From Schmidtea nova (lineage: Eukaryota), in assembly GCA_044892505.1 (NCBI GenBank), contig CM097883.1:250604001-250668000 (forward strand): DNA of 64,000 nt. Reading direction: 5' to 3'. Position numbers and translations under genes: made by a program. A model generated the notes under the pieces. It was not told the DNA's origin. It searched no databases and saw nothing but the letters and a program-made list of their open reading frames with translations. Of the stretch, positions 163 through 62,557 are shown in pieces (within the stretch, counting starts at the first letter, position 1; each line of letters opens with the position of its first letter).

Positions 163-1560
163 TTTGGTTGTACATTGGTAATTTCAATATATTATTGTTT
201 TCATATCTAGGGTCACGTCACAACACATAAATGTTCCCTGTGCGTATGACCATATATACGCATTGGTACTGTATACGACAGTCAAATGCAAGTCTGCAGA
301 TGAGCACCTGTGTTAGAACTACTCCCGACTTGTCATTCTGAACGGGTTCCTGCTGCCAATGAAAGGTCATACACGTCTAATTTCTTTCTACTTCCAAGGG
401 TCCTTTTAATTTATCAGTTATAAACTTTTTATATCTCACTTAAAATCTACACTTATTTATCCCAAAAATATCTAAATACCACCCCTTAATTTTCCCCTTC
501 CCTTGCCATTCTATACAATTCAATGAAACGATGGTACGGAGGAACCGATTATTCGATCCAAACACTTCTAACCGATCGGGGACTCGTGACTGGTGAGTCA
601 ATAGATTCCCTCCTAGAATAATTTTAACGGGAATCAAATTCAAACAGAGCAGAGAAAACAAACACGATTATATTTCAAAAATATTTATTAATCATATTAC
701 AAAATCGTACAAATTCAAATTAAATCAAAGAATAAAACATACTTGTAACAATCGTTTCCGCTTGAATCACTAAATACAATCAACTGGTGCTGGCTGGCAG
801 AAGGAATTCACAAACGTCTTTTCACAAAATAAAAATTAATGTTAAACTGTCTATCCGCACAATTTATGGTTAAAAGTGTTAAATTTATGATTTTTCATTG
901 TCTATTTATACTATTTTTTATACTTGGCATTGTGTTAATTGAAACAAGAATATTTAAAATTTATTTCATATATTTATTTTAATATTTTAATTATTTATTT
1001 TTATAAATTTATTTATTATCAGTAAATTTATTTTATTTATTTTTTAAATATTTATTTTTAATTCATTTAAACAATGTGTGTATTCACTTTTTGCGCGCGT
1101 TAATTGATTTATTAAAACAATAAAATTTAATTTCAATTCTATTTTCATTCCTATTTCTGTTATTTTAACGAGATTTTAATGGGGATTTATTCTATAATCT
1201 TTAATAAATTATTCTCTATTTTGATAACAATTTTATTCTTCAATTATACTTTTTATTAGCAATGATCTTCCCCATTCAATTCTTGCGCCGTCTTTCGTAT
1301 GTAAATTTGACCTGCACTCAAATTATGTGCTCTAATTTGAGATGCATCTTTTTATCGTTTCCTTCCTAACTCGACCTACTTATGAAATGCGGTTCGCATG
1401 CTTACTATTTATGTTTTAATATCCTATATACTTTCATGCTATTTTTCTGTTTAATACTTTTATGTACTAACATGCACTTTTAATTCTCCTCTTTTTTGTA
1501 TGTATTTAATTTTTGACGTATTAAAACAAAAATATAACTTCAACTTTTACCAACCCAACA
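163..1560 (-). mobile_element. U1: ~1.4-kb TG...CA element (solo-LTR-like or non-autonomous integrase-type element)
   Basis: Ends in CCCAACA at 1560 followed by gttt. The left end TTTGGT (TGTTGGT minus one G) is preceded by gttt at 159-162. Colinear with U2 (3784-4824 + 17756-17852 + 21002-21327). Confidence 0.7.
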
Positions 1561-3530: not shown

Positions 3531-5424
3531 GACAAGGAATGTTATTTAAAATGCTGACGAATACATTATTTTGAAGGACTTATGTCGGATAATGATAAAG
3601 GTGATCAGTTTGAAAGATTTGATTTTATTCAGTTTTAAAAATATATTAAGGTGGTGGTTTCACCGTTGATTTTTTTTCTGAAGCATACCAAAGGTTGCGG
3701 TGGACGACAGTAATTACACCTAAAGGGAGGTCATTGCGATGTTTGATAATTTTGTTAACAACATTAAACAAATTCGATCATAGTGTTGGTATGGGTTGGA
3801 AAAAATTTTGTTTCTAGGGATTAGTGCAACATACATACCTTTATGAATATTGTTAATACTTCACCCAAACACCCATAGTTACTCCTTAGTAAATTATGTT
3901 GATATTGTACACGATGGCGAGAATCCAGAGAACAGATAAGCTTCATTGCCAAAATTACTCCTCGCTGTATTCTCTCTTTCGGGTCCCTTCTGATGATAGA
4001 ATAAGTTACGCATATATCAATTTAAACGATACTTTAAACTTATAAATTTTTATCTTCCTGTGATGTCATTTTATGATTCTACCCTATACGTTTATTTATT
4101 TCCCTAAAATTATCATAATAACAACCACAATATATCATTAATTCTCTTTCACCCCAGTCAATCTATATAATTTAAGTTTGATGATCCGGCCTCCCAATTG
4201 CACCTCTGCGAGAATGAATACCAGACACACCGAAGATCCACGACCTAATGGCCAACATGATCTTTGCACGAATTCAGTTTTTATCGGGAAAATTAACTGA
4301 ACAAAGCAAAACAAACAAATGTATGGTTAAACAAATATTTATTATTGATTACAAATAACATAAAACGCAATTACATATAAAGAATAATAGTTTCAACAAA
4401 CTTGATAGATACATAAAATAACAACATACTTGTTTCCGAGGTACCACAAAATTGAAAAGGAACAATACTGACTGGTGCTGGCTGGCAGAATTGAAATCCA
4501 TAAAAATCCCAGTTAATGTATCCTTCCGCAAAGGTAAGTAAAAATGTATTAACAGTAAGTTTACCGTTCAAAGTTATGATTTTTCAGCTTCTATTTATAC
4601 ATTTTTTGTGTGAAATCTACGCATTGTTAATTAAAACAAGAATATTTAAAATTTAATTCATATATTTATTCTAATATTTAAATTATTTATTTTAATAAAT
4701 GATTATTTATTTATTTTCCTTAAATTTAATTTTATAATTAATTTTAGTTTTTTCAAAATATTTATTTTTAATTCTATTAAATAATGGGTGTATATACTTT
4801 TTGCACGCATTAATTGATTGATTATGTCGGGCAAAAACTGCAAATTGTTTTAATAAAGCAGTAACCCATAAGTAGAGATCCCGCAAGATTCAATTTTAAC
4901 CCAAACATTCATTGAAAACCAAAGTGATTAAGAGAAAAACGTCAAAAAGGTGAAGTGGACTCAAGCACAGTAACCAGTAGAGTACGCGCTAGCTGTGAAT
5001 TTGCAAGTTCCTTCACTGAAATCTCGAGAAAAATTAAATATTATCCAAAGAAGAACGTTTGAAGGTTTGATTAAGCGGAAAACCCATTGAAAATGGTCAC
5101 AAAAAACAGAATTTTGTCGTAAACCTTCAGTGCAGAAAAATTAACACAATTTTAGAAGAAAATTGTGATTTTATCACAAAATTTCACATTTAACAATAGA
5201 AAGAACTAATATTGATCGAAATATCGTAAATTAAATCAAATCGAACAAATTTCGATTCAAAAATAAAAATTTTGAATTAAAATAAATTATTTGTGGTTTA
5301 TAAAAAATTATTACACAAAAATATGTATTTAATTTTCGGAAAATCATTAGAATTAATTTAGAAAAAATTAAAAAGAAAATTCTAGAACAATTTGTTTTAT
5401 TGCACTAGTGAAGATAGCGCAAAA

Positions 5425-5460
5425 TCGATGGTATATATACCGCCATCAAAATGGCAATAA
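5425..5460 (+). promoter_or_regulatory. Palindromic TATA (GGTATATATACC) next to YY1-like CGCCAT/AAAATGGC motifs in W
   Basis: Motif conserved in W2 at ~10010-10050 (reverse orientation). Confidence 0.5.
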
Positions 5461-6194
5461 TAAGAATTTGTAAGATTTTTCGTGAAAATTTAGAATTTGT
5501 GAAAATTATCAGATTTTTTAAGAATTTGTTATTGTCATTAAGAAAAATTTTGTTGAAAGAATATTTCCCGAGAATTTGTTAATGAATTTTCGTGAAGAAA
5601 ATCCTTTGAAGCGGAACTCTGAAATTCTAAGAAGGGATTAAAGGAAGAAGGAGATAAAATCGAGAACCCGATACAAAGATTTTTGCGCGAATTCGAAGAT
5701 TTTATCCGGAATATAAGGAGTAATTTTGTTTTATTATTTTTATTGGGGTTTGGGATCGTCGCTCATCATGCCTGACGATCATCCCATTCCTCGCACTTTG
5801 TTAATTAATATGCTATTTATTATTTTATTTTTATTGATTATGCATTTTTATTATGATATTATTAAAATATTTAATGTTATCAACTCAGTTTTTCAAATTT
5901 TCTTATTACTATTATTATTATGAATCATAAATTCCCAACATAATTAAAAGATTCTCTTTGCAAGCAGTTAACTAAATAAAATTATGAAAAATAAAGAATT
6001 TTTTTTCCTCCCATATCTTCTGACGATCCGTCCAGCCTTGCGTTGTGCGGATTTGTAAGTAGCCTGGGTGGATCATTGTCTGATTGGTAATCGGCCAGCC
6101 CATTTTTCCACTTTAAGGTGAGGCTCATACATCCATAATCACGTCATCCCAACTAAGGAATCGTGGTATGGCTAAGAGCAAGGATTTGTTATAT

Positions 6195-9100
6195 TGGTGG
6201 GTTGTTGATCGTCAATATGACCTTGACGTTTCTATGGCTCTCATCAACAACTCAACACATAAAACATTGAAATAACCATCTTGTTACCCGTCACTATGTT
6301 ACGTTGGTACTGTAACAAGTGGGTGGGTATTCGCAATCAGTGAGCGTCGTCAATACGAAACTATGATTGACCGAATATCTCCTGGGTCCAAGGGCTACCG
6401 ATAGAAGGTTTATTGCCCATTTTGTCCCATCTTACATGATTTAACTACAAATATCTATCTCAAAAATGAAATAATTTCACCGATAAAATCTTAATAATTT
6501 ATCTCAAATCAATACTTTCACACAGTTTTATCTAAATTCACAGGAATTTTCGCACTTTTATTCTATTTGCAAGCATGCATTCGAAGATGTTATCGCAACT
6601 CAATTGGGTGATCAATTATTCCTGCATATATTTGGGAATATACAAATTACCCTTATTTAGACCCAAATTTTTTTTTATTCTCGCGATTTTCTTAAATTAT
6701 TATGTCTTTTATATTTAAAATTCATGTAAACTCTATTTATATTCAAATCCTATTGTCTATCTTACTCTAAATTTATAATATAATTTTTATTAACATTTTA
6801 GCGATTTATACTTTAAATTTTTACCGCGGCCGTGACAACGGGTTTGATTCATTAAAACATTTCCATTTATAATTAATAGTCACATTGTTAAATATGGATT
6901 ACATTAGGAATTTTATTTGGTAAATCCCCCTTTTATTCTGTTCCAGGCAAATTTCACTTGGATTTTTGATCAAAAGGATGAAATCTACATGATCAAACTT
7001 TTCCATGCTAAAAATTTTGTTATAATGCATCAATTGATTTTACTTTCAATGACATTATTTCAAAGTTTCGTCAGCCAAATTCCCCAATTTCTCAAGTAAA
7101 ATTCTTTTACTAATTTTAGCTTAAAATGATTTTCCTTGTAGTATCATTTAATTCAAAACAAAAGCTATTCAATCTGGCATAATTGCTGGAATCCCTATTC
7201 AAATGCCTCGGCTACTCTGTTAGAATATTTTGAATATTCTCGTAATGAACCCATCCACCCAGTTTTCCGTGGACAAGTTTATAGATTTAAGAACTTTTGA
7301 TATTGTTATTTCTATTTTATGTGATGTTCAATAAAAGTTTTCCTGGTTTGATTTTAATTAGTTTATTGATTTTGTTTAGGGATAGGATGATGGCTAACGT
7401 CAGTAAAACTTCTTTTACGATGAAATTTTCCGATTAGGTTTTGATTAAATAAAATTAGTAATTATCCCTTTTCCCAGTTTTTAAAAAATAAAAATATATG
7501 TTCTGTTTCTATTACTTTATGGATAAAAAAAAATTTTCTGAATGTATTTTGTTATCATAAGGTATGTTTAACGAGTGAGGTGGGCTGATCTGTAGAGATA
7601 TGTGAGAAATCCAACTCTCAGGGGGGTGAAATTAATATAAATGCGGATTGTTGGCTAACATACATCGGGTGGGGTTTATGAATCGGCGTACTGTACCCTA
7701 TAAGGAAACTCTATATAGGATGTTGTAGTTTGCTGTGGTTTGGTGAGACGAGATGTAGTGATTGTAGGCTGGTGTGCATATGGTATAGAAATAATATGGT
7801 AATATATTGAAGTAGATATCCTATTGTTGTAGATGTATGTATTTGTATGTCGTTGTGGTTGAATGAGACGAAGTACAATGACTGTGTGTTATATTGTTTC
7901 TGTTATGTTTGCGTGTGATGTGTGGATATATGAAGGGAACAATTGAGTGCTTGTGAGTGTGGTTAGACGTACGATGCTAACTAACATGTCTGGGTGGAAT
8001 TTTCGGTATGATTTGCTTGTGTGTATATGATTGTTGAATGTTATTGAATGATACTGTGTATGTGTGTATATTGTATTTTATATGTATTGTTGCTGTATTA
8101 TCAGTATGGGTGATGCTATTGAATGAAATGGATGTAATTTTTTGCAATTAGAGATGCATCATGATTTTGAGATATCGTGGGGGTAGTTATAATATACTAT
8201 ATATAAATTATATAAAATATTTTTAGCTTTAAAATAATAATAATACTTTTTAAGTTAAAATACTAATAATAATTTTATAATACTTTTTGCAAATCTCACT
8301 TTATAATTTTCATGAAAATTAAATAACGATAAAATTTATAATTTTTATAATGTAGATTTTTGAATTTAAATTTTTATATTTTAAGAATAGATATATTAAT
8401 CATAAAATTTTTCTATAAAATTTTCGAATTCAGATTTTTACAAAATGATAAAAATTATTAATATAATAATAAAATTTCGATCTATAATTTTTATGGGGTT
8501 CGATATAACTTTTGATTTACAATTTTCTGGGATTTTATAAAATGATCAAATCTTTTATATAATAACAGTATTAGGAAAATTTTTGGTTTACAATTTTTCC
8601 ATGATAAAATCTTTGCAGCATATTAAAAAGCAAATCTTTATTCTTGATCAAAATGAAATAATAATAAATTTTTATCCATAAATTTCGAAATCCAAATAAG
8701 CATTCAACCTAAAAAGTTTTATACGCTGAATAAAAAAAAATAAAAATAACATAAGTTATAAATTCTTCAAAGAATATTTTTCGATATCGAGCAAAATGAA
8801 TTTCGGTTTTGTTGAGCATGAATTTCCCAATTAAAGTGCACGCGAATTTTTCGGGACGCTTCACTTAGGAATTTCAAGCTCTCGAAAACGAGGTTCACTG
8901 GAGAAACTTATTTAGACAATAATGAGTTTAATTCAGATCCAATCAATACTTGTTTCACAATTCGTTTCATTTCATGATCATTATACTAGCTTTGAGCATT
9001 ATTTCGAACAATTTTCTTTTCGACATTAGCTTCCGTTTTTCTTGCGTTTTTCGCATAAGATGATCGTTGTTGAGAGTGTGAAGGTGAAGGTGAGTACGAG

Positions 9101-10628
9101 TCGATTTTATTCAATAATATTTCCTATTTTAGATTTCAAGACATGAATTAGAAAATGTTTTGTTATATTACGAAATTTCTTATGTAAAATAATAAAAATA
9201 TGCTACTCTATTATAATAAAGATCATTAGTATAACAAATCCTTGCTCTTGGCCATACCACGATTCCCCAGTTGGGATGACGTGATTATGGATGTATGAGC
9301 CTCACCTTAAAGTGGAAATATGGGCTGGCCGATTACCAATCAGACAACGATCTACCCAGGCTACTAACAGATCCGCACAACGCAAGGCTGAATGAATCGT
9401 CAAAAGATATGGGAGGAAAAAAAATTTTATTTTTCATAATTTTATTCAAATAACTACTTGCATGGTATTTTAAGTATTTTGGGAATTTGTGAATATCAAG
9501 AAAATTCAAGATTAAACTGAATAAAAAATGAATTTAATATTTAAATAATACCATAACAACATATTAACATTAAATAAAATAAAATAATAGATGCATTATG
9601 AACTAATAAAGCGCGAGGAATGGGATGATCGACAGGCATGATTACCGACGATCCCATACCCCTCGAACAAGTTTAAAGAGAAAATAAAATAGAAATAAAA
9701 TAACCCTTACATTCCTGTATTCTCAATTTAATTTCTGCTCCAAAGGACTTTCTCCACGAAATAAATTAACAATTTAATTTCTGCCCAATGCTAAATTCTT
9801 TTAGAAAATTTTCAATAAGTTCTCCGGAAAGTTTTTCAGAAAAATTCTCAATAAAATTCGGCTGAAAATTTAAATTCTCCCGGAAAGTTCTTCAAATCCT
9901 TTTGGAAAAAATTTTTTTTAACAAGTTCTTCAACAACTTCTCTTAGAAAAATTTTAACAAACTAAATTCGATTAAAATAAAAATTTTTGTTACCACAAAT
10001 TCTGATTATTGCCATTTTGATGGCGGTATATATACCGTCGATTTTTCGCTATCTTCACTAGTGCAATAAAACAAATTGTTCTAGAATTTTCTCTTAATTT
10101 TTTCTAAATTAATTCTAATGATTTTCCGAAAATTAATTCCATATTTTTGTATAATAATTTTTTATAGACCATAAATAATTTATTTTAATTCAAAATTTTT
10201 ATGTTTGAATCGAAATTTGTTCGATTTGATTTAATTTATGATATTTCGATCAATGTTAATTCTTTCTATTGTTGAATGTGAAATTCTGTGATAAAATCAC
10301 AATTTTCTTCTAAAATTTTGTTAATTTTTCTGTACTGAAGGTTTATGACAAAATTCTGTTCTTTATGGGCATTTTCAATGGGGTTTCCGCCTATTCTAAC
10401 TTTCACGCTTTCTTCTTTTAATTTTTCCCGAGATTTCAGTGAAAAGACTTACAAATTCGCAGCTAGCGCGTACTCTACCAGTTGATGTGTTTTGATTCCA
10501 CTTCAACTTTTGGTGTTTTCCACTTAATTGTTGATTTTTAATGGATGCTAGGGTTAAAAATGGAATCTTGCGCGTTCTCTACCTATGGGGTTATCGCTGT
10601 ATTAAAAAAATTGCGTTTTAGCCCAACA
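6195..10628 (-). mobile_element. W2: 4.43-kb W-family copy inserted in reverse orientation into W1
   Basis: atat|TGGTGGG at 6191-6201 and CCCAACA|atat at 10622-10632. 9233-10628 is the reverse complement of 4825-6190, ~7950-9230 of ~10633-11980, and 6195-6430 of 14130-14245 + 17635-17751. Confidence 0.9.
8756..9036 (-). pseudogene. Disabled copy of W orfA
   Basis: Aligns to 10825-11108, with ATG>ACG, TGG>TAG and 1-nt indels. Confidence 0.75.
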
Positions 10629-10824
10629 ATATTAATGATCTTTATTATAATATAGTAGAATATTCATACTACTTTACATAAGCAATTCGTAATATAACAT
10701 AAATTCATCCAGCTCATGTCTTGAGATCTAAAATAGGCACTATATTACTGAATAAAATTGACCCGCACTCACCTTCGCCTTCACCCTCACAACAACTGTC
10801 ATTTTATCCGAAAACGCAAGTAAA

Positions 10825-11108
10825 ATGGAAGCTAATATTGAAAAGAGAATCGTTCGAAATAATGCTCAAAGCTGGTATAATGATCACGAAATGAAGCGAA
10901 TTGTGAAGACAAGTATTGATTGATCTAAATTAAACCTCATTTATTGTCTAAATAATTTTCTCCAGTGAACCTTGCTTTCGGGAGCCTGAAGTTTTTAAGT
11001 GAAGCTTCTCGAAAAAATCGCGCGCACTTTAGTTGGGAAATTCATGCTCGAACGAAACCGAAGTTCACTTTACTCGATGTCGAAAAATATTCTTTGAAGA
11101 ATTTATAA
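10825..11108 (+). CDS. W orfA: two-exon gene (10825-10912, 10966-11108), ~76 aa, unknown function
   Basis: MEANIEKRIVRNNAQSWYNDHEMKRIVKT/MNLAFGSLKFLSEASRKNRAHFSWEIHARTKPKFTLLDVEKYSLKNL. The 53-nt GT..AG intron carries several small indels versus W2. Exon differences are enriched for synonymous changes. Confidence 0.7.
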
Positions 11109-11669
11109 CTTATTTTATTTTTAATTTTTTTATCTCGGTATATAAAACTTTTTAGATTGAATTCTTATTTGGATTACAAAATTTGTTGATAAAAATTTAT
11201 TATTGTGTGGATTTCGTTTTGATCAAAATTAAAAATTTACTTTTATTATACTACGAAAGATTTTTAATGTAAAAATTGTAAACCAAATATTTTCCAAAGG
11301 ATTTGTAAATCCAAAATTATATCGAACCCCGTAAAAATTGCCAATCGAAAGTATTGTTATTATATAAAAGATTTTGTCATTTTATAAAATTTCTAAAAGT
11401 TTGTAAATCAGAAATTATATCGAAACCCATAAGTTTATAAATCGGAAATATTATTATTATATTAAAATTTTTGTCATTTTATAAAATTCCAAATCCAAAA
11501 TTTCATAGGAAAATTTTTACGATTAATATATATATTCTTAAATTATAAAAATTCGAATCTGAAAATGTATATTATAAAAATTTAGAAATTTTCTTATTTT
11601 CATAAAATTATAAATTTAAAAATTTATAAAAATCATTATAAAATTATTAGTATTATTTTAATTTGGAAA

Positions 11670-11675
<6 letters not shown>

Positions 11676-11731
<56 letters not shown>

Positions 11732-11740
11732 ATTATATAT
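11676..11740. repeat. (AT)n microsatellite inside W1
   Basis: Direct reading of the sequence. Confidence 0.95.
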
Positions 11741-12417
11741 TATTATTATCGAAACCCCCTCGATATCTCAAAATCATAAGGCATCCCTATTTGCAAAAAT
11801 TTACATCCATTCCATTCAATAGCATCACCCATACTGATAATACAGCAACATACAGATAAAATACAATATACACACATACACAGTATCATTCAATAGCATT
11901 CAACAATTATATACAAACAGGCAAACCATACAGAAAATCTACACAGTTATGTTAGTTAGCATCAAATCTCGCATATACAATCACATATTGATACATGCAA
12001 ACTTTTACATTCAAATTATCATATTAAGTCCCATCCATCCATTCGTAAAGTACAAAAATTTCATAAGTCAGTAATATATATCAACCAAGTACAATTATCA
12101 TGCACCGGTAAAACCTTAAGATTCCGATTACCCGAAAATATAATCCTCATTCATAATAAAGAAGAATCTAATGTTCTCTAAAAGTTTTATCTCTTATCGT
12201 TGATTTGAAATCGTTTTCCCGGACTGGATCGATGAAATTTCAAATCTCCGATCATAAAATTTTTTTTTTAATTTTTGTATAAAATTTCGATATTATGAAG
12301 AAAATAAATAAATTGAAGTAAGATTCCTAAGTTTTTAATTTTTTATTATTAATTATATCATGGAAATCGTAATCAAAAATTTAAGAGAAAATTCATAAAA
12401 TTTTTATTTTTACTTAC

Positions 12418-12836
12418 AACATGACAAATAATCACAAGTGTCTCCAATTCCAAATAACTATTTGTGGAAATAGTTCAGATATCGTGGCAACATTTCTTCT
12501 GAAAATTTCAATTGTCGGGGCGAGTTCCACGAGAGAATCAATAAATTCTGAAGTTATAATGTAAAAGATTGAATAATTTAATCTTATCCCACTTACGATT
12601 TCACTTGTCGAACGGCGATACCGATAGCTTCTTTGAATGGCTGGCATCTGAAACTAGTATCTAAATTAGGAATGAAATATCATAAAGGAGTAAATACAAA
12701 TCAACTTACCGCTAAATCCAGTTGAGATCAGGGGGAATCCTATTCTAAAAATAGAAAAATAATCAATAATTATAATATGCAAAATCAAATTCGTATACTA
12801 TAAATTAACCAATAGGAATCCACCAATTTTGCTTAC
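12418..12836 (-). other. Possible multi-exon antisense transcript in the W1-specific cargo
   Basis: Minus-strand GTAAG donors at 12836, 12709, 12596 and 12417, with TAG/CAG acceptors at 12745, 12661 and 12548 (introns of 92, 49 and 49 nt). No clean joined ORF found. Confidence 0.35.
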
Positions 12837-13455
12837 TCGTTTATATAGTTTTCTTCTTTCACAGGGGAACAGCGTTGTTTTCAGGGGTATCCGGATCCGA
12901 TTTGGATTTTCTAAAATGAAATTTAATTTGAAATCTGAAAATATGGAAAATATTTAGAATTAATAGATAATAATTAAATTAATTTTACTCAATATTTAGG
13001 TAGCTTATATTGATACCGTTGCCAATGCCTCGGTGAAAATTTAAATATAAATTTATTAAAACTTTAAAAATAAAATTCATAAAATTTCCATCAGAATAGC
13101 AAGTTAGACACTAGGTATAGGGGATTAAAAATCTTAGCTCGAATTTTTAGTGAAAGAAAAGGGCTAAGAAAAAATCGAAATTCTGAAGTAAATAAGCATT
13201 TGGACATAGATAAGAAAGAGCTAATACGTGATGATAAAAGATTCTTTCGTTTCGATTCCCGAATTGAGGCTTGATAGGCATACCCATGGAAAACTCGCGA
13301 TCGAATATGTGAGAGCTCCTTAAAGTATTGTAATAACAAATGAACTAATTAAATCTTAGTGTATGATGATAAATGTTGTAATTATTGTGCATTAATCATT
13401 ATCGATATGTATTAAAATACTTGAATACTTTTAGCAATGAACCCAATGCAACAGC

Positions 13456-13923
13456 TTGAGGGAATATACAAGTTATTACTCGAAAATGCAAGGCACAATA
13501 AAATTTCGGGCCCGCTGTCGCGAAATGGAAGCAACATGGTCCGACAAGGAAACAGTAGATCGATTGAAAAAGCAAAATCAACTAATGATGCAACAAGCCG
13601 CCGAAGACGCAATGAGATTGCGGGCGTGTCGTGTCTCAATGCGAGAGCAGGAGCTCGTGAATGAGAAACTAAGGGTAGATAGTGGCCTCATCTCGGCCAT
13701 ACTACCGAAATCTCAGCCTCCACCTCAGGAATTGTTCCCGGTGAGAGTGGAGGAAGAAATCGCAGCAGCAGCAGCTCCGACCAAGCCAAAGCGATGGAGG
13801 CCCAGTAAAGGAGCAAGAGCTAGGAATAAGCGTCGCCAAGAAGCGCGAGTATTAGGCCAATTGGGAGTAGAGGCCTCGAAAATCATTGATTTTAACATTG
13901 ATTTGACCAGTACACACATTTGA
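13456..13923 (+). CDS. W1 orfB: ~155-aa coiled-coil protein with an Arg/Lys-rich patch; true start uncertain
   Basis: Open, GC-richer ORF. A ttttag acceptor at 13434 is followed by ATG 13437 in another frame (possible frameshift); the first in-frame ATG is at 13486. Contains KPKRWRPSKGARARNKRRQ. AATAAA follows the stop. Confidence 0.65.
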   Translation: MREYTSYYSKMQGTIKFRARCREMEATWSDKETVDRLKKQNQLMMQQAAEDAMRLRACRVSMREQELVNEKLRVDSGLISAILPKSQPPPQELFPVRVEEEIAAAAAPTKPKRWRPSKGARARNKRRQEARVLGQLGVEASKIIDFNIDLTSTHI

Positions 13924-14249
13924 TGTGATCCTATAATAAATGTTGTTTTATGTTACAATTATAAGTTTTCAATTATGTTTTTTTCAATTTGTTTGTTTGA
14001 ATGAGGATACAGATAAAAATAAAAGAGTTCAAATAAATTAATTGATTAATAAATGAACCACGGTTTAGCGAAAATATTCAAATGGAGATCTCGTATGGAA
14101 AATCCACAGCGATAGAGCGGTTAATTTAAAGGGACAAAAATGGGCAATAAACCTTCTATCGGTAGCACTTGGACCCAGGAGATATTCGGTCAATCATAGT
14201 TTCGTATTGACGACGCTCACTGATTGCGAATACCCACCCATTTGTCCCA

Positions 14250-17200
14250 TTTGAGGCCCTAGGCAAAAATCAATTATTGTGGCCCCTCTAAGATTTTTTT
14301 TTAAATAATAAATAATTTTTTTTTCATGGCTTAGTTTCTAAATTTTGACCAAAGAAAGCCCATTTATAATATTTTTTTTCGTGATTTATTATTTGCAAAA
14401 TTATCAATTAAGGAGTCATAGTTAATTTTTTTGACTAGATCGCTTTCAATTGCCATGATAGCTAAGTGATTTAGTTTTTTTTGGCCAAGTGACGTCCTTA
14501 GGTAGTTTTTGACCCGCTTAAGAATGCTAAATGATCTCTCACCAGACGCATTTGCAATTGGGATTGTTAAAAATTTTTTTAGGATTATTTCAACGTTTGG
14601 AAATGTTGATGATAAACCTTCCATAATTGATGCATACATTTCAGGAAGTGTTAATAATTTTTCCAATTTTACAAAATGAAGGAACTGTTCAACCTCATCT
14701 TTGAATACTAATTGATTTATGTCATCTTTATAGTGTTCAGCTAAATTTGATACACACTGAGCAAATTTTTCTTCAGGCAAATCTAAATCAACAAATATTA
14801 GAAACTTTTCTAATACCTTGTCATAAACTACAGACCTTCTTTTTATTTCAAAGTTAAAAGTATCACAAATTGAGTAAAATGTTTCAACTTTGAATAGTTC
14901 TTTCCCACATAAAATTGTGTCATTATCAGAAGTTTCATCGAATAGTATTTTTCTTTTCCTGTTTCGATTTTTTGCTGTTGAGTATTCTGTACTACCAGAT
15001 AATTCGATTGCTTCTTTTTCCATTTGGTGAAAATATGCATCATTAGTTCGAATACTAAGTATGAATTCTGATAAAGATTTCAATAAATATGTTCCTTTTT
15101 GTAAGTTACATTCTTTGCTTTGTAACGACTTATTGGTGGCATTGATTCTTTGCAATAGCGTATTCCAAAAAATCAATAACAGAGCCGTCTCTAAATCTTC
15201 AAAACTGCTATGTAATTTTTTCGCCTCAATTTTTGCTATGGGTTTTTCAGATGGGTTAATACAAATTTCACCAAGAACAGTTTTTATGGAAAAAATTCAT
15301 TCTTACAGTTAATACAGCTTCAGCTCTAACTGACCATCGAGTGTCGCATATACGTTTTAAACTATGGCTTAATTTTTGATCAGTATTCATTAGCTGATCC
15401 CATCTCTTTGTCGAAGAGGAAAAAAACAAACAAATTTTGAATAAAATCAAAGAATCTAATAGCTTTAGAAAAACATTCTGCTGCTGTATTTCCAACTACA
15501 TTTAAAGAATGTCCTGCGCAAGGTACAAATTCAGCATTTTGCTGTAACATTTAATTTTGGCTTGGAGACCGTTATAAATGCCTGACATGTTCGCAGCATT
15601 ATCATACGTTTGTCCCCGGCAATTATTAATATTCAACCCTAATTCTGACAAGGCGGACAAAATCGTTTTTTCTAAATATGTTGCATCATGATGTTCAATC
15701 GAAATAAAACATATGAACCTTTCTTGAATTTTTTGATCCAGATCTACGTACCTGATAATAATAGTTAACTGGTCAGTATGGCTTGCATCAGGCGTGGAAT
15801 CAACTATAAGAGCAAAATAGTTAGCTTGGTTTATTTCATCAACAATGGATTTTTGTACGGTTTTGCCCATAAGTTCTATAAATTCATCACACGTGCTTTT
15901 AGATAAATAATTAACATGCCCACTTCCGCAATTACTGTATTTTTCTAAGTGAACCTTTAAGAAGTCATCAAATTCAGCCAAATATTCAATACAGCTGAAA
16001 AAATTGCCTCTGGAAGAATTATCATGTCCTCTGAACTCTAAACCCAAACTTCCCAAAAGTTTAACTGTAGCAACGACTCGTTTTAATACCTCTCACCAAT
16101 AAATTGACTCTTTTTCTATTACCTGTAAAAGTTTGGAATCGATGCGACCACTTATTTTAGCACGACGAACATAAGCACACATACAACTTTTATGTTCTTT
16201 CGACTCATCATGTCTTTTCAAAACGTCTACAATATTTTTCCAATCTGAATATCCTGAAACTAGAACATTAGATTTTTTACTAAATAGTTTACAAGCAAAG
16301 CAATAAACAGATTTCGTTGTTTCAGAATAAATCAACCATTCTCTTAGCTCTTGGACTCCGTTTATTTTAGTCGTATAAAAATGTACATCATTTAATTTTC
16401 GGTATATTTGTTGATCATTGTTATCTTTATAACATTTTTTAGAAGACTCTAAATCTCCCACATTTTTGGGTTTTGTACAGATACAATGTTCAATCACATC
16501 ATTAGTAATTATTTTTGGCCATAAACCAATGTCAGTAAAGATAGGATAAGTATTTGTACTTACTACTTCACTCTCAATTTCAACCTCAATGTCATTGGTA
16601 GTGGCAACGCAATTATCACTTGCACCTACTTCTGCACAAAGACTGCTTATCGAAAGATTAACATCGCTATCAGCTATTACTGGTAGTGAAACAGTTTTAT
16701 CTGCAGCCGCAGTACTGGTAGATGGAATATTTTTATCCAAAGACATAAATTTAGCAAGGGAGTTTCTTTGCTTTTCGTTTTCCTTCAATTGAATTTTTTT
16801 CGCAATTGTTTTTGTGCGCCAGACTCGAAAGTTCTTTTCATTTTAACGTATATTTGTCAATATTTTTTTTTTAAATAAAATGGAATAATTGTCGAGTGAA
16901 TTATGAAATATTAAATGACGAAAGCAAGAAGCAACAACGATTGGTTTCGGTAGTTTTAAAAAAACTGTTGATTATTCAGAAAATATCAATCTAAAATCAA
17001 AATTATGCTAATAATCAATACGTACAAATATTTATTTTCAATATTCAAAATCATGCAACGAAAATTTGATGTTAACGTAACAAAATTCAAACAATAAATG
17101 AAATGAAATTGCATATGAAATGCTATGACTATTGTTTGTATTTTTTAAAATAATTTTATTATTTTTCTTTTTAATTTTTCAGAGTTTAAAACCTATTCGT

Positions 17201-17634
17201 GGGGCCTCAAATTCAATTGATAAAATAAAATTAGTAGGCCTTTACAAAATAAAATATATTATATTCAAAAAATAAAATTCAAACCTTGCTTGGATGTTGC
17301 TTTTATCCTATTTGTTATTTTTTCTTATAAATTCTTATAAGTAAAAGAATTTGAACATATTCAAAAAGGAAAAAAGCAACATCCAAGCAATATTTTGTAT
17401 ATCATATATTTTATTTTGTAAAGGCCTACTAATTTTATTTTGTAAATTGAAATTGAGGCCCCAAAAGGTTTTAAACTCTGAAAATTTTAAAACTGTTAAA
17501 GTTTAAAATGTAAAATGCTACGACTATTGTTTTTTTTAAAAAAAAATTATAATTTTTTTTTGTATTTTGGAGGCCCTTATAAATCCGAGGCCCTAGGCAA
17601 ATTCCTAATCTGCCTACAGGTAAATACGCCGCTG
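14250..17634 (-). mobile_element. hAT DNA transposon inserted in the W1 terminal block; left end lost
   Basis: Intact terminus CAGCGGCGTATTT (minus strand, from 17634) and subterminal gaggccctaggcaa repeats at both ends. No matching terminus or TSD on the left. Confidence 0.8.
14364..16841 (-). pseudogene. hAT transposase (ZMYM1-like, TTF-type Zn finger, hATC dimerisation domain), frameshifted
   Basis: MKRTFESGAQK N-terminus; WLIYSETTKSVYCFACKLF; FALIVDSTPDASHTDQLTIIIRYV; CRGQTYDNAANMSG; CDTRWS; GERSFSILKRVKNYLRTSL. Split over at least 4 ORFs. Confidence 0.92.
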
Positions 17635-18184
17635 ATTACCAACGTTACTTAGTGACGGGCAACAAGATGGTTATTACAATGTTTTGTATGTTGAGTTGTT
17701 GATGAGAGCCATGGTAACTTCAAGGTCATATTGACGATCAACAACCCACTAATTAAAACAATAAAATTTAATTTCTATTCTATTTTCATTTCTATCTCTG
17801 TTGTTTTTAGATATTTTAACCGGGATTTCTTCTATAATTTTTAATAAATTATTGTTGGGTCCGCCAAATAGGCTAGAACAACAACAATAGAACGAAAGTT
17901 TAAAATAATAATAAAATAATAAACATAAAAATAGCAATAAAGACAAATTAAAAATAGGAATAAAATAGCAAATAATATTTAATAAGTTTCCAGTAAAAGG
18001 AAATTTTAAAAATAAAACGGTAAATAACAGCAAAGGGGGCCTGAAATAAGAAAATTAAGAATTAAATAAACTAATAGTACAAATAATTAATTAATTACTC
18101 GAAAAACCAGGACCACCCAGCGAGAAACCGGAAAAGGAAATAAAATAATGTTTGGATTTAAATAAAATAATAAAAACACTTTGA

Positions 18185-18245
18185 TGGACGGTCTGATCCT
18201 AATTGGTCAATCCGACCAGCCGGATCAGTATAAATACCGATCCGA
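18185..18245 (+). promoter_or_regulatory. Pol II-type promoter of V (ATTGG/CCAAT box + TATAAATA at 18229-18236)
   Basis: Block conserved in V' at ~32200-32265 (reverse) while flanking sequence diverges. Confidence 0.7.
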
Positions 18246-18527
18246 AAATCACAACTGTTAACTGTTATTTTTAACAAAACTCGTTCACTGACACACACAC
18301 AATTTTTACTTACTTATCGAGCAACCAATTTTTACTCAATTATCAATAATTTCGAGAATCGTTTTTAACCAAATCTTATATTCGAAGAAAAATTCAACCC
18401 AAAACAGGGTACGGAATCGTAACGTTTTATTTTAATTGTATTATAATGTTTTAATGTACCTATGATTTTTATTATTACAATTTTATATCTGATTTTATTT
18501 TTATCATTAATTTAATGCATATAGTTA

Positions 18528-20584: not shown

Positions 20585-21930
20585 ATACAAATTTTGAACG
20601 ATTATCATTCCTATTATTTTCTTCGGTTTAGTTTAATTAATAAAAATAAAGTAAATAAATAATTATGAGAGCACTAGATTAGAAAGTTTCATTCAACGTA
20701 AAAGATAATAAAGAACAATCCTCCGAAATTTTATTGTAAATTACATAGTATGTCATTAAAGCGTAAGTCCTTCAAACGGCCGCAATGAACCCGTAAACAT
20801 AAATGGGGAGTAGTACTAGCAATAGTGCTCACCTGCCCATCATTGTTTAATCACCCTGCGCATCACCAACTTGATTATCCAGGGAAATAATCAAGGGCGC
20901 TTGAGTGTTTAGTTGCACATTTTATGTATGATCATGGATGAGGGATTCCTAGTCATTGTTAGAACATTTTTCATCTAACCCCTCCATGAACCCAGCATTA
21001 TTCTCTTTATTTTGATACTAATTTTATTCTTCAAACATGCTTTTTATTAGCAATGATCTTCCCCATTCAATTCTCATGCGGTCTTTCGTGTGTAAATTGG
21101 ACCTGCATTCAAATTTGTGCTCTCTTTTGAGATGCGTATTTTTCATCGTTTTTCCCTAACTCGAGCGACGTATAAAATGTGGTTAGTATGACTTATATTT
21201 GTGCTTTAATATCCTATTTACTTTGATGCTATTTTCATGTTTAAAACTCTTATGCGTCATCGTGAGCTTTTAATTTAATTTTGAAGTATTAAAACAAAAG
21301 TTGAACCTCACTTCTACCAGCCCAACAATAGTGTTTATGCCGCGGTCTTGCCAATATATTCATCGAGTATGAAAACTATGTTGTGGATGATGTCTTTGTA
21401 GCTAGCTACCCTTGACTAGCCAAGACATGATCGCTATAGACAGCGAAATATTGATGCCCAGATCTAATTGATCTCAACTTTGGGAAACGACCCTTGTGGA
21501 CGCGAGTACTTGCCCAGTGTGTCTTTTAGGCAAAGGCATTTAATCCTCGCTCTTTAGGACTGACAATAATAAAGCACATTTACTTCGCCTTGATAGAATT
21601 TTTATAATAATGATTATTAAAAGTAATAAAAATCCTTAATAATAATTATACCAATTATAATTTATAAGAATTAATAAAAACAAAAAAATTATATTAATAA
21701 ATATAAAAATAATAATACTGAGAAAAAATACCAAATAATAAAAATAATTAATAATAAAAAAGCTTTTAAGAAGTAGTTAATAATAAAAATAATTGTAATA
21801 ATTAATAGTAATAATTATTAGTAATAATAATAAAATTTAATAAAGAAATAAAAATAATTATTAATAAAAATATTAATAATAAATAATATTATCATAATTT
21901 TCTTTTTGTTTCACCTTTGATCTTTTTTAA

Positions 21931-23372: not shown

Positions 23373-23844
23373 ATCGGTCGCGTTTCATATTCTAGGTCTG
23401 TACTAGGCTGTTTTTTATCATTAATTGTTTCTTATTTGTAATTCATTTGTTGAAAATCCGAGTGAAGACTTTTTACATGTAAATTTTAATATATTGTTGT
23501 TTTTTGCCTGGAAATTGTTAGTTTTATATATAATTTACCTTTTTTACTTTCGGAGAATCTGAGAATTGGCTGTTTTATATGTAAATTTGACTGTGTTGTT
23601 GGTTTAAACCTGAGAATTTTTAAGTTTTACTTTGAATGGACCATTTTTACATTTGACAATCAGAGAGTTGACTCTTACGTGGAAATTGTACTGTTTTAAT
23701 GCTTGACTATGTAATGATTATGTAATATACACACATGGGGTAGTGGTTCAGACTCCTCACGTCCACCTACTACAAAACTTCAAACGCCTTTTTCGTGCCA
23801 AAACCGGCCCGATCGAGTTTTTAGTGAAACAATAGATAGACAGA

Positions 23845-55349: not shown

Positions 55350-56981
55350 TATTTCTAGCATTGACGATGTAATCCTGGATTAAAAACGCAATTAATATGG
55401 AATTAATTTTTGATTAAAAGTGAAGCAGAAATATCATCGTAAATTTTAAATTGGAGAAAAATTTTAATTCATTTATTCAAATATTCAAATCAGATTTATC
55501 TTTTTTACACACCAGATTGTGAAGTAAATTAAAAAAGTAACTTAAATCTGTCCGATTTCAGAATTATTTTTAAATATTATAGAATTATTTGATATATTTT
55601 TTACTCAACAAAATTGAATTGTCAAAATGTGATTTATGAATTAACCGCCATGAGTTTGATTATGTCATAATTTTATCGTCGTAATTACATTCTATCCAAT
55701 CAAAAGAAACAGATTGATATAATTAATATTATAATTATTTTTTATTAATAAATTAAAATTTTTTTAAAATTTAAAATAGTTTAATTATGAATTTTGAAAT
55801 TTATTTATACTTTTATTAATTTTGTAATATATTTTTGTAATATATTTTGTAATAAATTTTAATTTTTAAATGAAGGAAAATATTTCATGTCATAAATAGT
55901 TCATTAAGCTTCTTTTTAAAATTGTGAAGTAATTGGGAAGTAATAAAAAAATAATCCGAAAAAAATTTAATACATGTTTATTTATAACATTTTTTATAAA
56001 GCTTAATATTTTGTGTACATAATGCCATAACGACGCCACTTAAAATAATTTACTACTTATTTATACCATTTTTTAAATGTCAAATACAGTGTTAAAAGTG
56101 GAAAACCAAATTATATATATATATACATTATTCAAACAAAACAATTATTATTGCAGAAACACCGTATAAAGGTCATTAAAAACAACAATGACCACAAAAA
56201 ATATAACAAATTTTCAAAGATGTTTACTAACTGTCAATGCATTTCTTCGTTTTCATTGTCAGATATAAAAGTATGTATTTTTTTTTATTTTCTATCTTGC
56301 TTTTCAACATAATTGTATGCCATAAAGAAGATTTTATACATTGTTAGCCAACCGTTAACGCACAGGTGAGTTTATTTTATATTATAGAATTTTATTATAG
56401 GGATTTTAATGCATGTTATACACCGTGTTTCACTCATTAGATTCAGCTATATAACTCGCGAGTGTGACAAACCCAAGGTAATTGGAAATCAATTTTTTTT
56501 AAATTTCATGTATTAGTTAACTTTTGTTGAGCTGGCAGAAGCGAGGTTCAATTTTTTTCCCAATTCGTCGAAAAGCAAATACACACAAAAAGAGGATAAA
56601 ATAAATTGCACGATAACACATAAGAGCATTAAACTGAAAAATAACTTAAGATTATATAGAATATTAAAGCGCAATATAGTAGGCATACGAATCGCATTTC
56701 ATAAATAGTTTGAGGTAGTGAAAAACCAATGAAAAAAATGCATCTCAAAAGAGATTACACAATTTGAGTGCAGGTCGGATTTATATACGAAGAACCGCAC
56801 GAGAATTGAATTGGGAATATCATTACTAATTAAAAGCATGATCGAAGAATAAGATTGTTATAAAAAAAAGAGAATAATTTATTAAAAATTAAAGAAAAAA
56901 CCCCCTTTAAAATATTGTAAAATTAACAGAAATATGAAGGAAAATAGAATAAAAATTAAATTTGATATTTTAAATTTGATT

Positions 56982-57813
56982 GAATTTAAGCATAAGATTC
57001 TCAAACATGTAGACAAGGATCAATTTAGGATTGTTTCCACATCTTGCAAAGTCAGCACTATATTCACTAATAAATGTCCAACGCCATTTGGTTTGTGTTC
57101 TTAGCTCGTGTATCAATTTTCATGTAATGGGTGTAATGCCACATACATTGGAGAGACTGCCCGTCATCTCTGCACCTGAGTTCTTGAGCATTGCCAACAA
57201 AAAGGACTGACTAATATTAGTGATCATTTTAGGAAATGTGTCAGTAAAAAATATGTATCTCTGATTTTAAAATTATTTCAAAAGGTTTCAGTAATTATTG
57301 GGAACGAGTAACTTGTGAGGCATTGTTGATTCGATATTTAAATCCAAAAATAAATGATCAAGTTGCCCGTTCCATGGATATTTTGAATGTATCTAAGTAA
57401 CTGAATGTTGAATGTTGCGAATTGTGTTTGTGGTATATTTATGTTTGTTTTTGTGAACATTTTCATTTTTTTTTTAAATTTGTAAATTGTATGATGAGTT
57501 TTAAATAAATTTTATTTTTGTTTATTAATTAATTTTTAAAATTTTATGTAATAAAATCTAAATGAAATTTTATTTTAAAAAATGGATGTTGAATTATGAA
57601 AAATGTTATATTTGCTTATTAATTTTTAAATTTTATTTTATAAAAAAAATTTAATTAAATTTAAAATTAAAATTTTGATATATTATGAGGATGATTATTA
57701 TTAATTAATTTGTTTAGATATTGCATATTTTCTATTTATTATTATTGATTATCCTGATTGCTGTCTGAAGAAGATTGTTATACAATCGAAATATATCGCG
57801 TTTATGTTGAATT
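56982..57813 (+). mobile_element. Second, shorter 5'-truncated Penelope copy (GIY-YIG + pseudo-LTR)
   Basis: Closely similar to 34857-35640; runs into an N gap. Confidence 0.9.
57762..57800 (+). ncRNA. Hammerhead ribozyme copy with a G.U-wobble stem I
   Basis: TGT-CTGAAGA-A-GATTGT TAT ACAATC-GAAA-TATATC-GCG. Confidence 0.7.
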
Positions 57814-59140
57814 NNNNNNNNNNNNNNNNNNNNNNNNNNNNNNNNNNNNNNNNNNNNNNNNNNNNNNNNNNNNNNNNNNNNNNNNNNNNNNNNNNNNNNN
57901 NNNNNNNNNNNNNNNNNNNNNNNNNNNNNNNNNNNNNNNNNNNNNNNNNNNNNNNNNNNNNNNNNNNNNNNNNNNNNNNNNNNNNNNNNNNNNNNNNNNN
58001 NNNNNNNNNNNNNNNNNNNNNNNNNNAAAATCTATTCATGCAATTTTTCAAAAACAAATTTAAAATTTAACTAAAAAATTCAAAGTTTACCCATTTAATT
58101 ATGTAAATAATAATTAACATTGAAAAAGAGTCAGTGAGATTTTAATATCCGTCGCTTATTAGAATTTGAATATGAGAAATATAAAGCTAAATAAATTTGT
58201 ATTATAAAATCAAGAAGTTTTCATAATAAATTTTTTTTTTAAATAAAAATAATATCGACAATAATTAAAAGAAATAAAAATATTTAAATTATACTGGGAT
58301 CTATTAAAAATTAATTCATAAACAAATTTATCAAATAAGAAATTTTTATATTATTTAAAAATATTATTTAATTTTTTTTTGTAATAAGGATGAAATTATT
58401 CATTAATTTCTGAAAAAAATTGAATTATTGATTTTGACAGCAGAGAATGACGTCGTGAATTTCACTTTTGTTTTAAATATATGCCATTGTTTCACATTAT
58501 TTGAAATTCGCATGAATTATATATTCGTTATTTTCAATCAATTTAACTATTTCACTGACTTAGTAAAACAAAATATTATTTATTTTGTAAATTTTATTTT
58601 TATTTTTGATTTCGATATCAAAGAAACGAAATAATTTATTTAAGAGTCAATTGAAAATATATTTGTGATAAAATATTAACATAATTTTGACCAAATATAA
58701 CCTAAATATTGTAAATATTTCTTCATTGAATGCTTTCGAAGCTACAAAAGTTTGCATTAACAGCCATTATCATACCGAAGTCATTCGTCAAAAGTTTTTT
58801 GAAATCGGTATAAATGACTAAATTTTCTTATGCATTGTTAATAAACTTTACCTTAATCGTATGGACAATTCGAAATGAATATTGGTATTTTTATATGATT
58901 TTTATTTAAAAGATAATCCGTCCTAATGTAACCTTTAATAACATAATTTACATATACTGGTGTAAAATATATAGATTTGCGCACTTTGGAAAAACAATGT
59001 AAATAGAAAGATTTCCAAGGCATTTGGTTTCGAAGAAACGAATATCATTTGCTTTTTATAAACCAATGATACAAAAACATTAGGTCTTTTTATAATTTAT
59101 GCTCCCATTCAAATTAAAAACAATTTGGCTCCTTTTTCAG

Positions 59141-62500: not shown

Positions 62501-62557
62501 CCATATCGTCACATCACCCGTGCCATCAAATTTTTCAATATATTTAATAACTTCCAT
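59525..62557 (-). mobile_element. Ty3/Gypsy-type LTR retrotransposon internal region (gag-PR-RT-RH-IN), degenerate, no LTRs seen
   Basis: Gag KFDGTGDVTIW and two CCHC knuckles; protease AVIDSG; RT IRPVLDYRELN, LDLSKAYLQI, YIDD; RNase H CDAS/NVAEL/SDS/NKAD; integrase HEAHH..CVKC, MDN, GIVERNHRTVKR, truncated near 59525. Confidence 0.93.

What the first reader, a model, noticed from the sequence alone, without database searches (positions are those of the whole stretch)
10825..11108. Spliced micro-gene in W that is absent from the ORF track and shows a purifying-selection signature
Seen: a two-exon 76-aa ORF. Versus W2 I count by hand about 12 synonymous and about 9 non-synonymous differences (two of them disabling), where neutrality would give roughly 1:3. 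The 53-nt intron has accumulated several small indels. The opposite-strand frame gives more amino-acid changes. No family recognised.
Basis: seen in the sequence. Interest (0 to 1): 0.7.

Follow-up and report, generated by a model that had tools for sequence, protein, structure and literature searches.

The report
Small ORF inside nested transposon copies
The 76-codon spliced reading frame exists and its two copies differ mostly by silent changes, but both copies sit inside two nested, decaying copies of one mobile element, so this is at best a transposon-borne mini-gene with modest support, not a demonstrated host gene.

Summary
That makes 76 codons plus a stop. Against the inverted copy W2 (9036-8756, minus strand) I count 14 synonymous and 11 non-synonymous changes. 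W2 carries four disabling lesions: lost start, premature stop and two 1-nt deletions. The silent excess is nominally significant (P about 0.01 to 0.0005, depending on the null). It is the top outlier among about 3,900 control windows. The ORF alone proves nothing, because 191 comparable two-exon ORFs occur in this window. The exons have as many substitutions as their flanks; they only lack transversions and indels, as does another GC-richer, non-coding patch. No relative was found by Pfam, PDB, the word search, the 1.84-billion-protein HMMER search, or metagenome and viral scans.

New context: W and W2 are not host paralogues. They are parts of two nested copies of a roughly 4.4-kb mobile element with TGT..CA ends and 4-bp target-site duplications. 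The outer copy is also split by a hAT transposon. My best reading is an element-borne small coding frame, selected while the family spread and now decaying. A chance ORF is nearly as likely. Only two copies were available, and there are no expression data.

The parts
10825..10912 (+). Exon 1 of the model: 29 whole codons plus the first base of a split codon. The start sits in an AAAATGG context.
10913..10965 (+). 53-nt GT..AG intron. The acceptor is good (TTTTCTCCAG). The donor is weak (CAA|GTATTG, with no G at -1 or +5). Against W2 it shows three 1-nt indels and 2 substitutions.
10966..11108 (+). Exon 2: two bases of the split codon, 46 codons, and a TAA stop that is kept in W2.
8756..9036 (-). 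W2 copy of the frame, broken in four places: start codon lost (9035), premature stop (8987), and 1-nt deletions between 8954/8953 and between 8814/8813. GT, AG and the stop are kept.
10633..11963 (+). Segment W (C part) of the outer element copy. It carries the intact frame, roughly 100-nt internal tandem repeats, an (AT)n run, and a tail (11755-11963) that is 91% conserved.
7973..9228 (-). Segment W2 (C part) of the inner element copy.
6195..10628 (-). Inner copy of the mobile element (4,434 nt). Read on the minus strand it starts TGTTGGGC at 10628 and ends ..CCCACCA at 6195. It has no internal LTRs or long TIRs.
6191..6194 (.). ATAT, one of the two 4-bp target-site duplicates flanking the inner copy. 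The other is at 10629-10632.
10629..10632 (.). ATAT, the second target-site duplicate of the inner copy. The two flanks together restore the uninterrupted X-C junction seen inside the inner copy at 9230-9232.
4825..17751 (+). Outer, older copy of the same element. It starts TGTCGGGC and ends ..CCCACTA. It is flanked by ATTA at 4821-4824 and 17752-17755, and is interrupted by the inner copy and by a hAT element.
14246..17636 (-). hAT transposon remnant that splits the 3' end of the outer copy. Its ORFs are broken and carry DUF4371 and the hAT dimerisation domain. The borders are approximate.
4825..6190 (+). X part of the outer copy (Xa). It equals 10628-9230 on the minus strand (Xb), at 83-87% with patches of 94%.

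Best explanation
The frame is a small coding sequence carried by a mobile element: 76 codons with one 53-nt intron, giving a basic, probably helical product.

Shown: the element is about 4.4 kb, has TGT..CA-type ends and makes 4-bp target-site duplications. That is the signature of insertion by a retroviral-type integrase. It is either a very long solo LTR of a Gypsy-like retrotransposon or a non-autonomous Ginger-like DNA element. A younger copy (holding W2) inserted, inverted, into an older copy (holding W). A hAT element later hit the older copy.

Inferred: part of the W-W2 divergence arose while the family was still spreading and the frame was being translated, which would explain the bias towards silent changes. 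After insertion both copies decayed. W2 collected four disabling lesions, and W is still open by survival, not by demonstrated host selection.

The product's role is inference only. The likeliest is an element-borne accessory protein, perhaps nucleic-acid binding, given a pI of 9.5-10 and no cysteines.
For: Frame and splice signals. GT, AG, the pyrimidine tract and the stop are kept in W2.

Silent excess: 14 of 25 changes are synonymous, where 6.4-8.5 are expected (P = 0.00045, 0.007 and 0.0097 under three nulls). The annotated frame is the best of six and the only open one. In about 3,900 control windows and frames across the W/W2 and Xa/Xb alignments, the mean silent fraction is 0.22-0.24, and only one window, which holds 6 stops, reaches 0.56.

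Indels: 2 events in 231 exon nt against 16 in 437 non-exon nt.

Mobile-element context: both copies have matching termini. Perfect 4-bp duplicates flank each (ATAT and ATTA). The inner copy's flanks restore the X-C junction. The 3' end of the outer copy matches the inner one at 97% and 91%, on either side of the hAT insertion. TGTNR ends and 4-bp duplications are reported for Gypsy LTRs and Ginger2 elements (PMC2836005).
Against: - Only two copies exist, so changes cannot be assigned to a lineage.
- The exons are no more conserved in substitutions than their flanks, and the intron is more conserved than the exons.
- Excess transitions and few indels also mark the GC-richer patch 5987-6193 (10 transitions, 2 transversions). 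The ORF in that patch changes 7 of about 48 residues, and one stop-ridden frame there reaches the same silent fraction.
- The donor site is weak.
- Such two-exon ORFs are common here: 191 in the window.
- No relative turned up in any search.
- Two disabling substitutions among 25 is about what fully neutral change would give.
Confidence: 0.45

Rival explanations
1. It is a chance ORF in non-coding transposon DNA. On this view the silent excess is sampling noise, helped by transition- and CpG-dominated change in a GC-richer patch and by picking one frame out of many candidates.
For: - 191 comparable two-exon ORFs occur in the window.
- The split of changes by codon position, 4:9:12, is not by itself significant.
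- With change type and CpG context held fixed, P is only 0.0097. That becomes roughly 0.1 after allowing for about 10 candidate frames in the alignable repeat.
- A clearly non-coding frame in the other GC-rich patch reaches 9 silent changes of 16.
- Substitution rates in the exons equal those in the flanks.
- The donor site is weak.
- There are no relatives anywhere.
- W2 is broken four times.
Against: - The frame is the single most extreme case, and the only one with no stop, among about 3,900 control windows.
- P = 0.00045 under the flank mutation spectrum.
- Two of the four first-position changes are the rare silent Leu type.
- Indels are about four times rarer in the exons than around them, and three sit in the 53-nt intron.
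- The start context, acceptor site and stop are all good and are kept.
Confidence: 0.35
2. W is a live host micro-gene, either domesticated from the element or born in it. Host-level purifying selection keeps it open, while W2 is its dead duplicate.
For: The older, outer copy has kept the frame open with a good start context, while the younger inner copy has four lesions. The silent excess is as described above.
Against: - The outer copy is otherwise wrecked by two insertions.
- The frame could stay open by chance: I estimate about 0.2, assuming half the observed changes fell on W (my own estimate, not a tool result).
- There is no orthologue, no annotated relative and no transcript evidence.
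Confidence: 0.12
3. The constraint is not protein-coding. On this view the region is a structured RNA or a cis-acting DNA element of the transposon, in which transitions are tolerated (G-C to G-U).
For: Changes in the exons run 23 transitions to 2 transversions, against about 1:1 in the flanks. A 34-nt stretch across the stop codon (11080-11113) is identical in both copies.
Against: - The folding energy is not unusual (z = -0.65).
- The two-sequence consensus fold has only one compensatory pair.
- There is no Rfam match.
- The changes do show a codon phase.
Confidence: 0.05

Closest known systems
Solo LTR of a Gypsy-like (Metaviridae) LTR retrotransposon
   Same: It has a 5' TGTNR start, a ..CA end, a short imperfect terminal inverted repeat and 4-bp AT-rich target-site duplications. 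It has no internal coding capacity for its own movement (the Gypsy end pattern is described in PMC2836005).
   Different: At 4.4 kb it is far longer than typical animal LTRs (my own knowledge). No full-length partner with two such LTRs and gag-pol is in the window. A spliced ORF inside an LTR would be unusual.
Ginger2/Tdd cut-and-paste DNA transposons (non-autonomous derivative)
   Same: It makes 4-bp target-site duplications at AT-rich targets. It has TGTNR termini and an integrase-type insertion signature (PMC2836005). DNA transposon genes do carry introns.
   Different: Ginger2 has TIRs of 50-180 bp. Here only about 8 nt at the ends are inverted-complementary. The 3' end reads TGGTG/TAGTG, not TGTNR. 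There is no integrase-like ORF. The duplicates ATAT and ATTA are not the reported RTATAY core.
Accessory ORFs carried in retroelement LTRs, for example the sag gene in the MMTV LTR (my own knowledge, not tested)
   Same: It would be an extra small reading frame inside the terminal or non-structural part of an integrase-mobilised element, expressed through splicing.
   Different: There is no sequence or fold relationship. The function here is unknown, and expression is not shown.
Small-ORF (micropeptide) genes of animals
   Same: The product is under 100 aa, was missed by ORF-length filters and has no recognisable family.
   Different: Accepted smORF genes are supported by conservation across species or by ribosome or peptide data. 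Here there are two copies in one locus and no such data.

Membership tests
Protein-coding gene under purifying selection | Open reading frame with start, stop and canonical splice sites | tested here: met
   ATG at 10825, a GT..AG intron at 10913-10965 and TAA at 11106-11108. The donor CAA|GTATTG is weak. Such ORFs are common by chance: 191 in the window.
Protein-coding gene under purifying selection | Non-synonymous rate clearly below synonymous rate, in phase with the frame | tested here: inconclusive
   14 synonymous to 11 non-synonymous changes, raw pN/pS 0.19. P ranges from 0.0097 to 0.00045 depending on the null. It is the top outlier among the control windows. But there is only one pair of copies and 25 changes, and one copy is a pseudogene.
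Protein-coding gene under purifying selection | Exons more conserved than intron and flanks | tested here: not met
   Substitution rates are 9.2% and 12.0% in the exons, 3.9% in the intron and 13-14% in the flanks. Only indels (0.9 against 3.7 per 100 nt) and transversions are depleted in the exons.
Protein-coding gene under purifying selection | Homologues in other genomes or a known domain | tested here: not met
   Searched exon by exon. Pfam gave none. The word search on exon 2 gave none. HMMER against 1.84 billion representatives with exon 2 gave 0 hits. PDB gave nothing real. Metagenome and viral contig scans gave none. Exon 1 (29 aa) is too short for the large searches. The joined protein was not searched.
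Protein-coding gene under purifying selection | Spliced transcript or translation evidence | not testable with these tools
   No expression data are available here.
Gypsy-type LTR (solo LTR) | TG..CA ends (TGTNR start) with a short terminal inverted repeat | tested here: met
   The inner copy runs TGTTGGGC ... CCCACCA. The outer copy runs TGTCGGGC ... CCCACTA. The pattern is described in PMC2836005.
Gypsy-type LTR (solo LTR) | 4-bp target-site duplication | tested here: met
   ATAT at 6191-6194 and 10629-10632. ATTA at 4821-4824 and 17752-17755.
Gypsy-type LTR (solo LTR) | Full-length relatives with two such LTRs flanking gag-pol | not testable with these tools
   None is in the window, and the source genome is not available here.
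Ginger2 DNA transposon | TIRs of about 50-180 bp | tested here: not met
   No inverted repeat of 25 nt or more lies at the ends of the inner copy. Only about 8 terminal nt match.
Ginger2 DNA transposon | Integrase-like transposase gene | tested here: not met
   The ORFs I scanned in or beside the micro-gene region and the X patches have no Pfam match. The remaining ORFs of the two copies were listed but not scanned, and none is longer than 155 aa. The element could still be a non-autonomous derivative.
Structured RNA family | Stable or covarying structure, or an Rfam match | tested here: not met
   No Rfam match. Folding z = -0.65. One compensatory pair out of 78.

The most novel reading that the evidence does not exclude
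An integrase-mobilised element, either a giant LTR-like unit or a non-autonomous Ginger-like transposon, carries its own spliced accessory micro-gene. That gene encodes a 76-aa basic helical protein with no known relatives, kept by selection in the element lineage and perhaps co-opted by the host in the still-intact W copy.
Probability: 0.15. Interest if true: 0.5.

Novelty: new member of a known kind. Interest (0 to 1): 0.25.

Why it matters
If real, it would add an orphan, intron-containing accessory gene to a poorly classified family of integrase-type mobile elements in an AT-rich animal genome. It would also show that length-based ORF tracks miss such genes. The practical result is more sober. 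The two 'paralogues' are nested transposon copies, so their comparison measures the element's history and not host-gene selection. The signal is too thin to annotate a gene without more copies or transcript data.

Tried and rejected
1. Relatives of the product. All of these found nothing usable:
- Pfam on both exon peptides and on neighbouring small ORFs.
- The word-index search with exon 2.
- The full HMMER search of 1.84 billion representatives with exon 2.
- PDB sequence searches. Exon 1 only matched designed repeat proteins through summed weak stretches, which I rejected as an artefact.

2. More copies of the element. None was found:
- tblastn and nhmmer within the window gave only W and W2.
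I therefore used the contiguous 50-aa open frame 10956-11105, by reference. It found nothing in metagenome contigs or viral contigs.
- A degenerate exon-1 DNA pattern in metagenome contigs gave 0 matches.
- Exact-protein look-ups of the small X ORFs and of a Polinton ORF gave nothing on record.
- The word search with the X ORF gave nothing.

3. Structured-RNA reading. Rejected.

4. Internal LTRs or TIRs in the element. None found.

5. Identifying the organism. Only arthropod-like hAT relatives at about 45% identity turned up, plus near-identical hAT pieces in two ENA metagenome assemblies. A literature search on those accessions found nothing; one project number in that query was my own guess and is not used.

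6. Structure. AlphaFold2 on exon 2 alone gave a helix-loop-helix at pLDDT 75. That is too generic for a fold search, so I ran none.

Full report
**What is there**

The window is AT-rich (about 28% GC) and full of mobile-element remains:
- a Polinton/Maverick-type polB at 27173-28869;
- a broken hAT transposase at 14364-16788 (minus strand);
- LTR-retrotransposon protease and RNase H pieces at 60101-62504.

There are no tRNA genes and no Rfam matches.

- ATG at 10825 in an AAAATGG context.
- Exon 1, 10825-10912: 29 codons plus one base.
- A 53-nt intron, 10913-10965: GTATTG ... TTTTCTCCAG.
- Exon 2, 10966-11108: two bases, 46 codons, then TAA.

The acceptor site is good. The donor is weak (CAA|GT ATTG), lacking the usual G at both -1 and +5. 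That judgement rests on my own knowledge of the metazoan consensus.

**The pair of copies**

W (10629-11963, +) aligns with W2 (9232-7973, -) at 79% identity. W2's copy of the frame lies at 9036-8756. It has:
- lost the start codon (changed base at 9035);
- a premature stop (8987);
- two 1-nt deletions, opposite W 10908 and W 11050.

That is four disabling lesions, not two. GT, AG, the pyrimidine tract and the stop codon are all kept in W2.

**Substitution pattern**

I counted exon by exon. The split codon and the two codons hit by W2's deletions were left out.

- There are 14 synonymous and 11 non-synonymous changes. They fall at codon positions 4:9:12, and raw pN/pS is 0.19.
- Placing the same kinds of change at random in the same frame gives 8.2 silent changes on average (P = 0.007).
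- Also keeping CpG context gives 8.45 (P = 0.0097).
- Drawing the spectrum from the well-aligned flanks gives 6.4 (P = 0.00045).
- The annotated frame has the most silent changes of the six frames and is the only one without stops.
- In sliding 225-nt windows over all frames of the W/W2 and Xa/Xb alignments, outside the gene, the mean silent fraction is 0.22-0.24. Only one of about 3,900 windows reaches 0.56, and that one holds six stops.

**Caveats on that signal**

- The spliced ORF is not evidence in itself. The same rules give 191 two-exon ORFs of at least 76 aa in this window.
- After an affine-gap realignment, substitution rates are 13.8% upstream, 9.2% in exon 1, 3.9% in the intron, 12.0% in exon 2 and 13.0% downstream. 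The exons are therefore not more conserved in substitutions.
- What differs is the kind of change. The exons have 23 transitions and 2 transversions, where the flanks are about 1:1. The exons have 0.9 indel events per 100 nt, against 3.7 outside them.
- The GC-richer patch 5987-6193 of the same element shows the same habit (10 transitions, 2 transversions, few gaps). The ORF on it changes 7 of about 48 residues between copies, so it does not behave as coding.
- Those two features may therefore reflect base composition. Only the codon-phase signal, with P about 0.01, speaks specifically for translation.

**Context: two nested copies of one mobile element**

A second repeat, X, occurs at 4817-6193 (+) and 10636-9230 (-).

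Read on the minus strand, 10628 to 6195 is one unit:
- X, then C (which is W2), then a 1.8-kb tail.
- It starts TGTTGGGC and ends ..CCCACCA.
- It is flanked by ATAT on both sides (6191-6194 and 10629-10632).
- The sequences outside those duplicates, Xa's end and W's start, together restore the X-C junction seen uninterrupted at 9230-9232.

So the unit holding W2 inserted, inverted, into an older unit made of Xa + W.

The older unit starts TGTCGGGC at 4825. Its 3' end is found at 14131-14245 (97% to the inner copy) and at 17637-17751 (91%), on either side of the hAT element. It ends ..CCCACTA and is flanked by ATTA at 4821-4824 and 17752-17755.

The two copies do not align in the middle part: 11964-14130 against 7972-6429.

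There are no internal LTRs or long TIRs.

TGTNR ends with 4-bp duplications are the reported signature of Gypsy LTRs and Ginger2 transposons (PMC2836005). Ginger2's TIRs of 50-180 bp are absent here. Several other repeat families in the window also begin TGTTGGG.

I did not build any consensus or joined version of the element.

**Relatives**

None was found:
- Pfam: none.
- Word search on exon 2: none.
- Full HMMER search on exon 2: 0 hits at E <= 0.001.
- PDB: nothing real.
- Metagenome and viral contigs: none.
- Further copies in the window: none.

Exon 1 is too short for the large searches.

The joined 76-aa chain was not searched or folded, so a weak match that needs the full length cannot be excluded.

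Exon 2 alone folds as a helix-loop-helix at pLDDT 75. Both exon peptides are basic (pI 9.5 and 10.1) and have no cysteine.

**Rival reading as RNA**

The folding energy is ordinary (z = -0.65). The two-sequence consensus fold has one compensatory pair out of 78.

**Verdict**

- Most likely (about 0.45): a small coding frame belonging to the mobile element, filtered by selection while the family spread and now decaying. W is still open, W2 is broken.
- Nearly as likely (about 0.35): a chance ORF whose silent excess comes from sampling and mutation bias.
- Possible but unsupported (about 0.12): a live host gene in W.

The N runs (33399-33916, 35675-35805, 35952-36141, 36331-36565, 57814-58026) were left untouched.

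Noticed in passing
window 26030-29704 (+), with 17850-18254 and 32192-32602: ORFs with Polinton/Maverick-type DNA polymerase B and an endonuclease VII-like domain. The flanking stretches are inverted relative to each other (74% identity), and both begin ..TGTTGGG. This may be one roughly 14.7-kb Maverick-like element.
   Followed up: partly
window 14246-17636; loci L001, L002: A hAT element with its transposase in three broken ORFs is inserted in the outer copy. Two ENA metagenome assemblies (ERZ28573524, ERZ27235085) hold contigs that match its DNA at 98% and 92%. DNA of the same or a close species therefore sits in those samples.
   Followed up: partly
window 5086-5471 / 10379-9995 and 5987-6193 / 9434-9230: Two patches of the X part are 94% identical between copies, while neighbouring stretches are only 53-78% identical. 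The first patch ends in a palindromic GGTATATATACC followed by GCCATCAAAATGGC, which looks promoter-like. The conservation is unexplained.
   Followed up: partly
window 60101-62504 (-): A GC-richer stretch (43%) holds LTR-retrotransposon remains: aspartyl protease, DUF7047 and RNase H-like domains.
   Followed up: no
window 33917-34402 and 35160-35646: A 99% identical inverted repeat of about 490 nt lies next to masked N runs. Related copies at 78-83% identity lie at 56982-57813.
   Followed up: no
window 23812-24860: A tandem array with self-matches at offsets of about 144, 288, 432, 576 and 720 nt (72-82% identity), in a stretch of about 20% GC.
   Followed up: no
window 13456-13923 (+): A 155-aa ORF with a TTG start, Ala/Arg-rich and GC-richer, sits in the middle part of the outer copy. 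That part has no counterpart in the inner copy. It was not scanned against any library.
   Followed up: no
window 1111-1560, 20997-21327, 56525-56975: A repeat family of about 450 nt (78-79% identity) whose end also reads TGTTGGG(C/T)TGG. It could be LTRs of another family that uses the same end sequence.
   Followed up: partly
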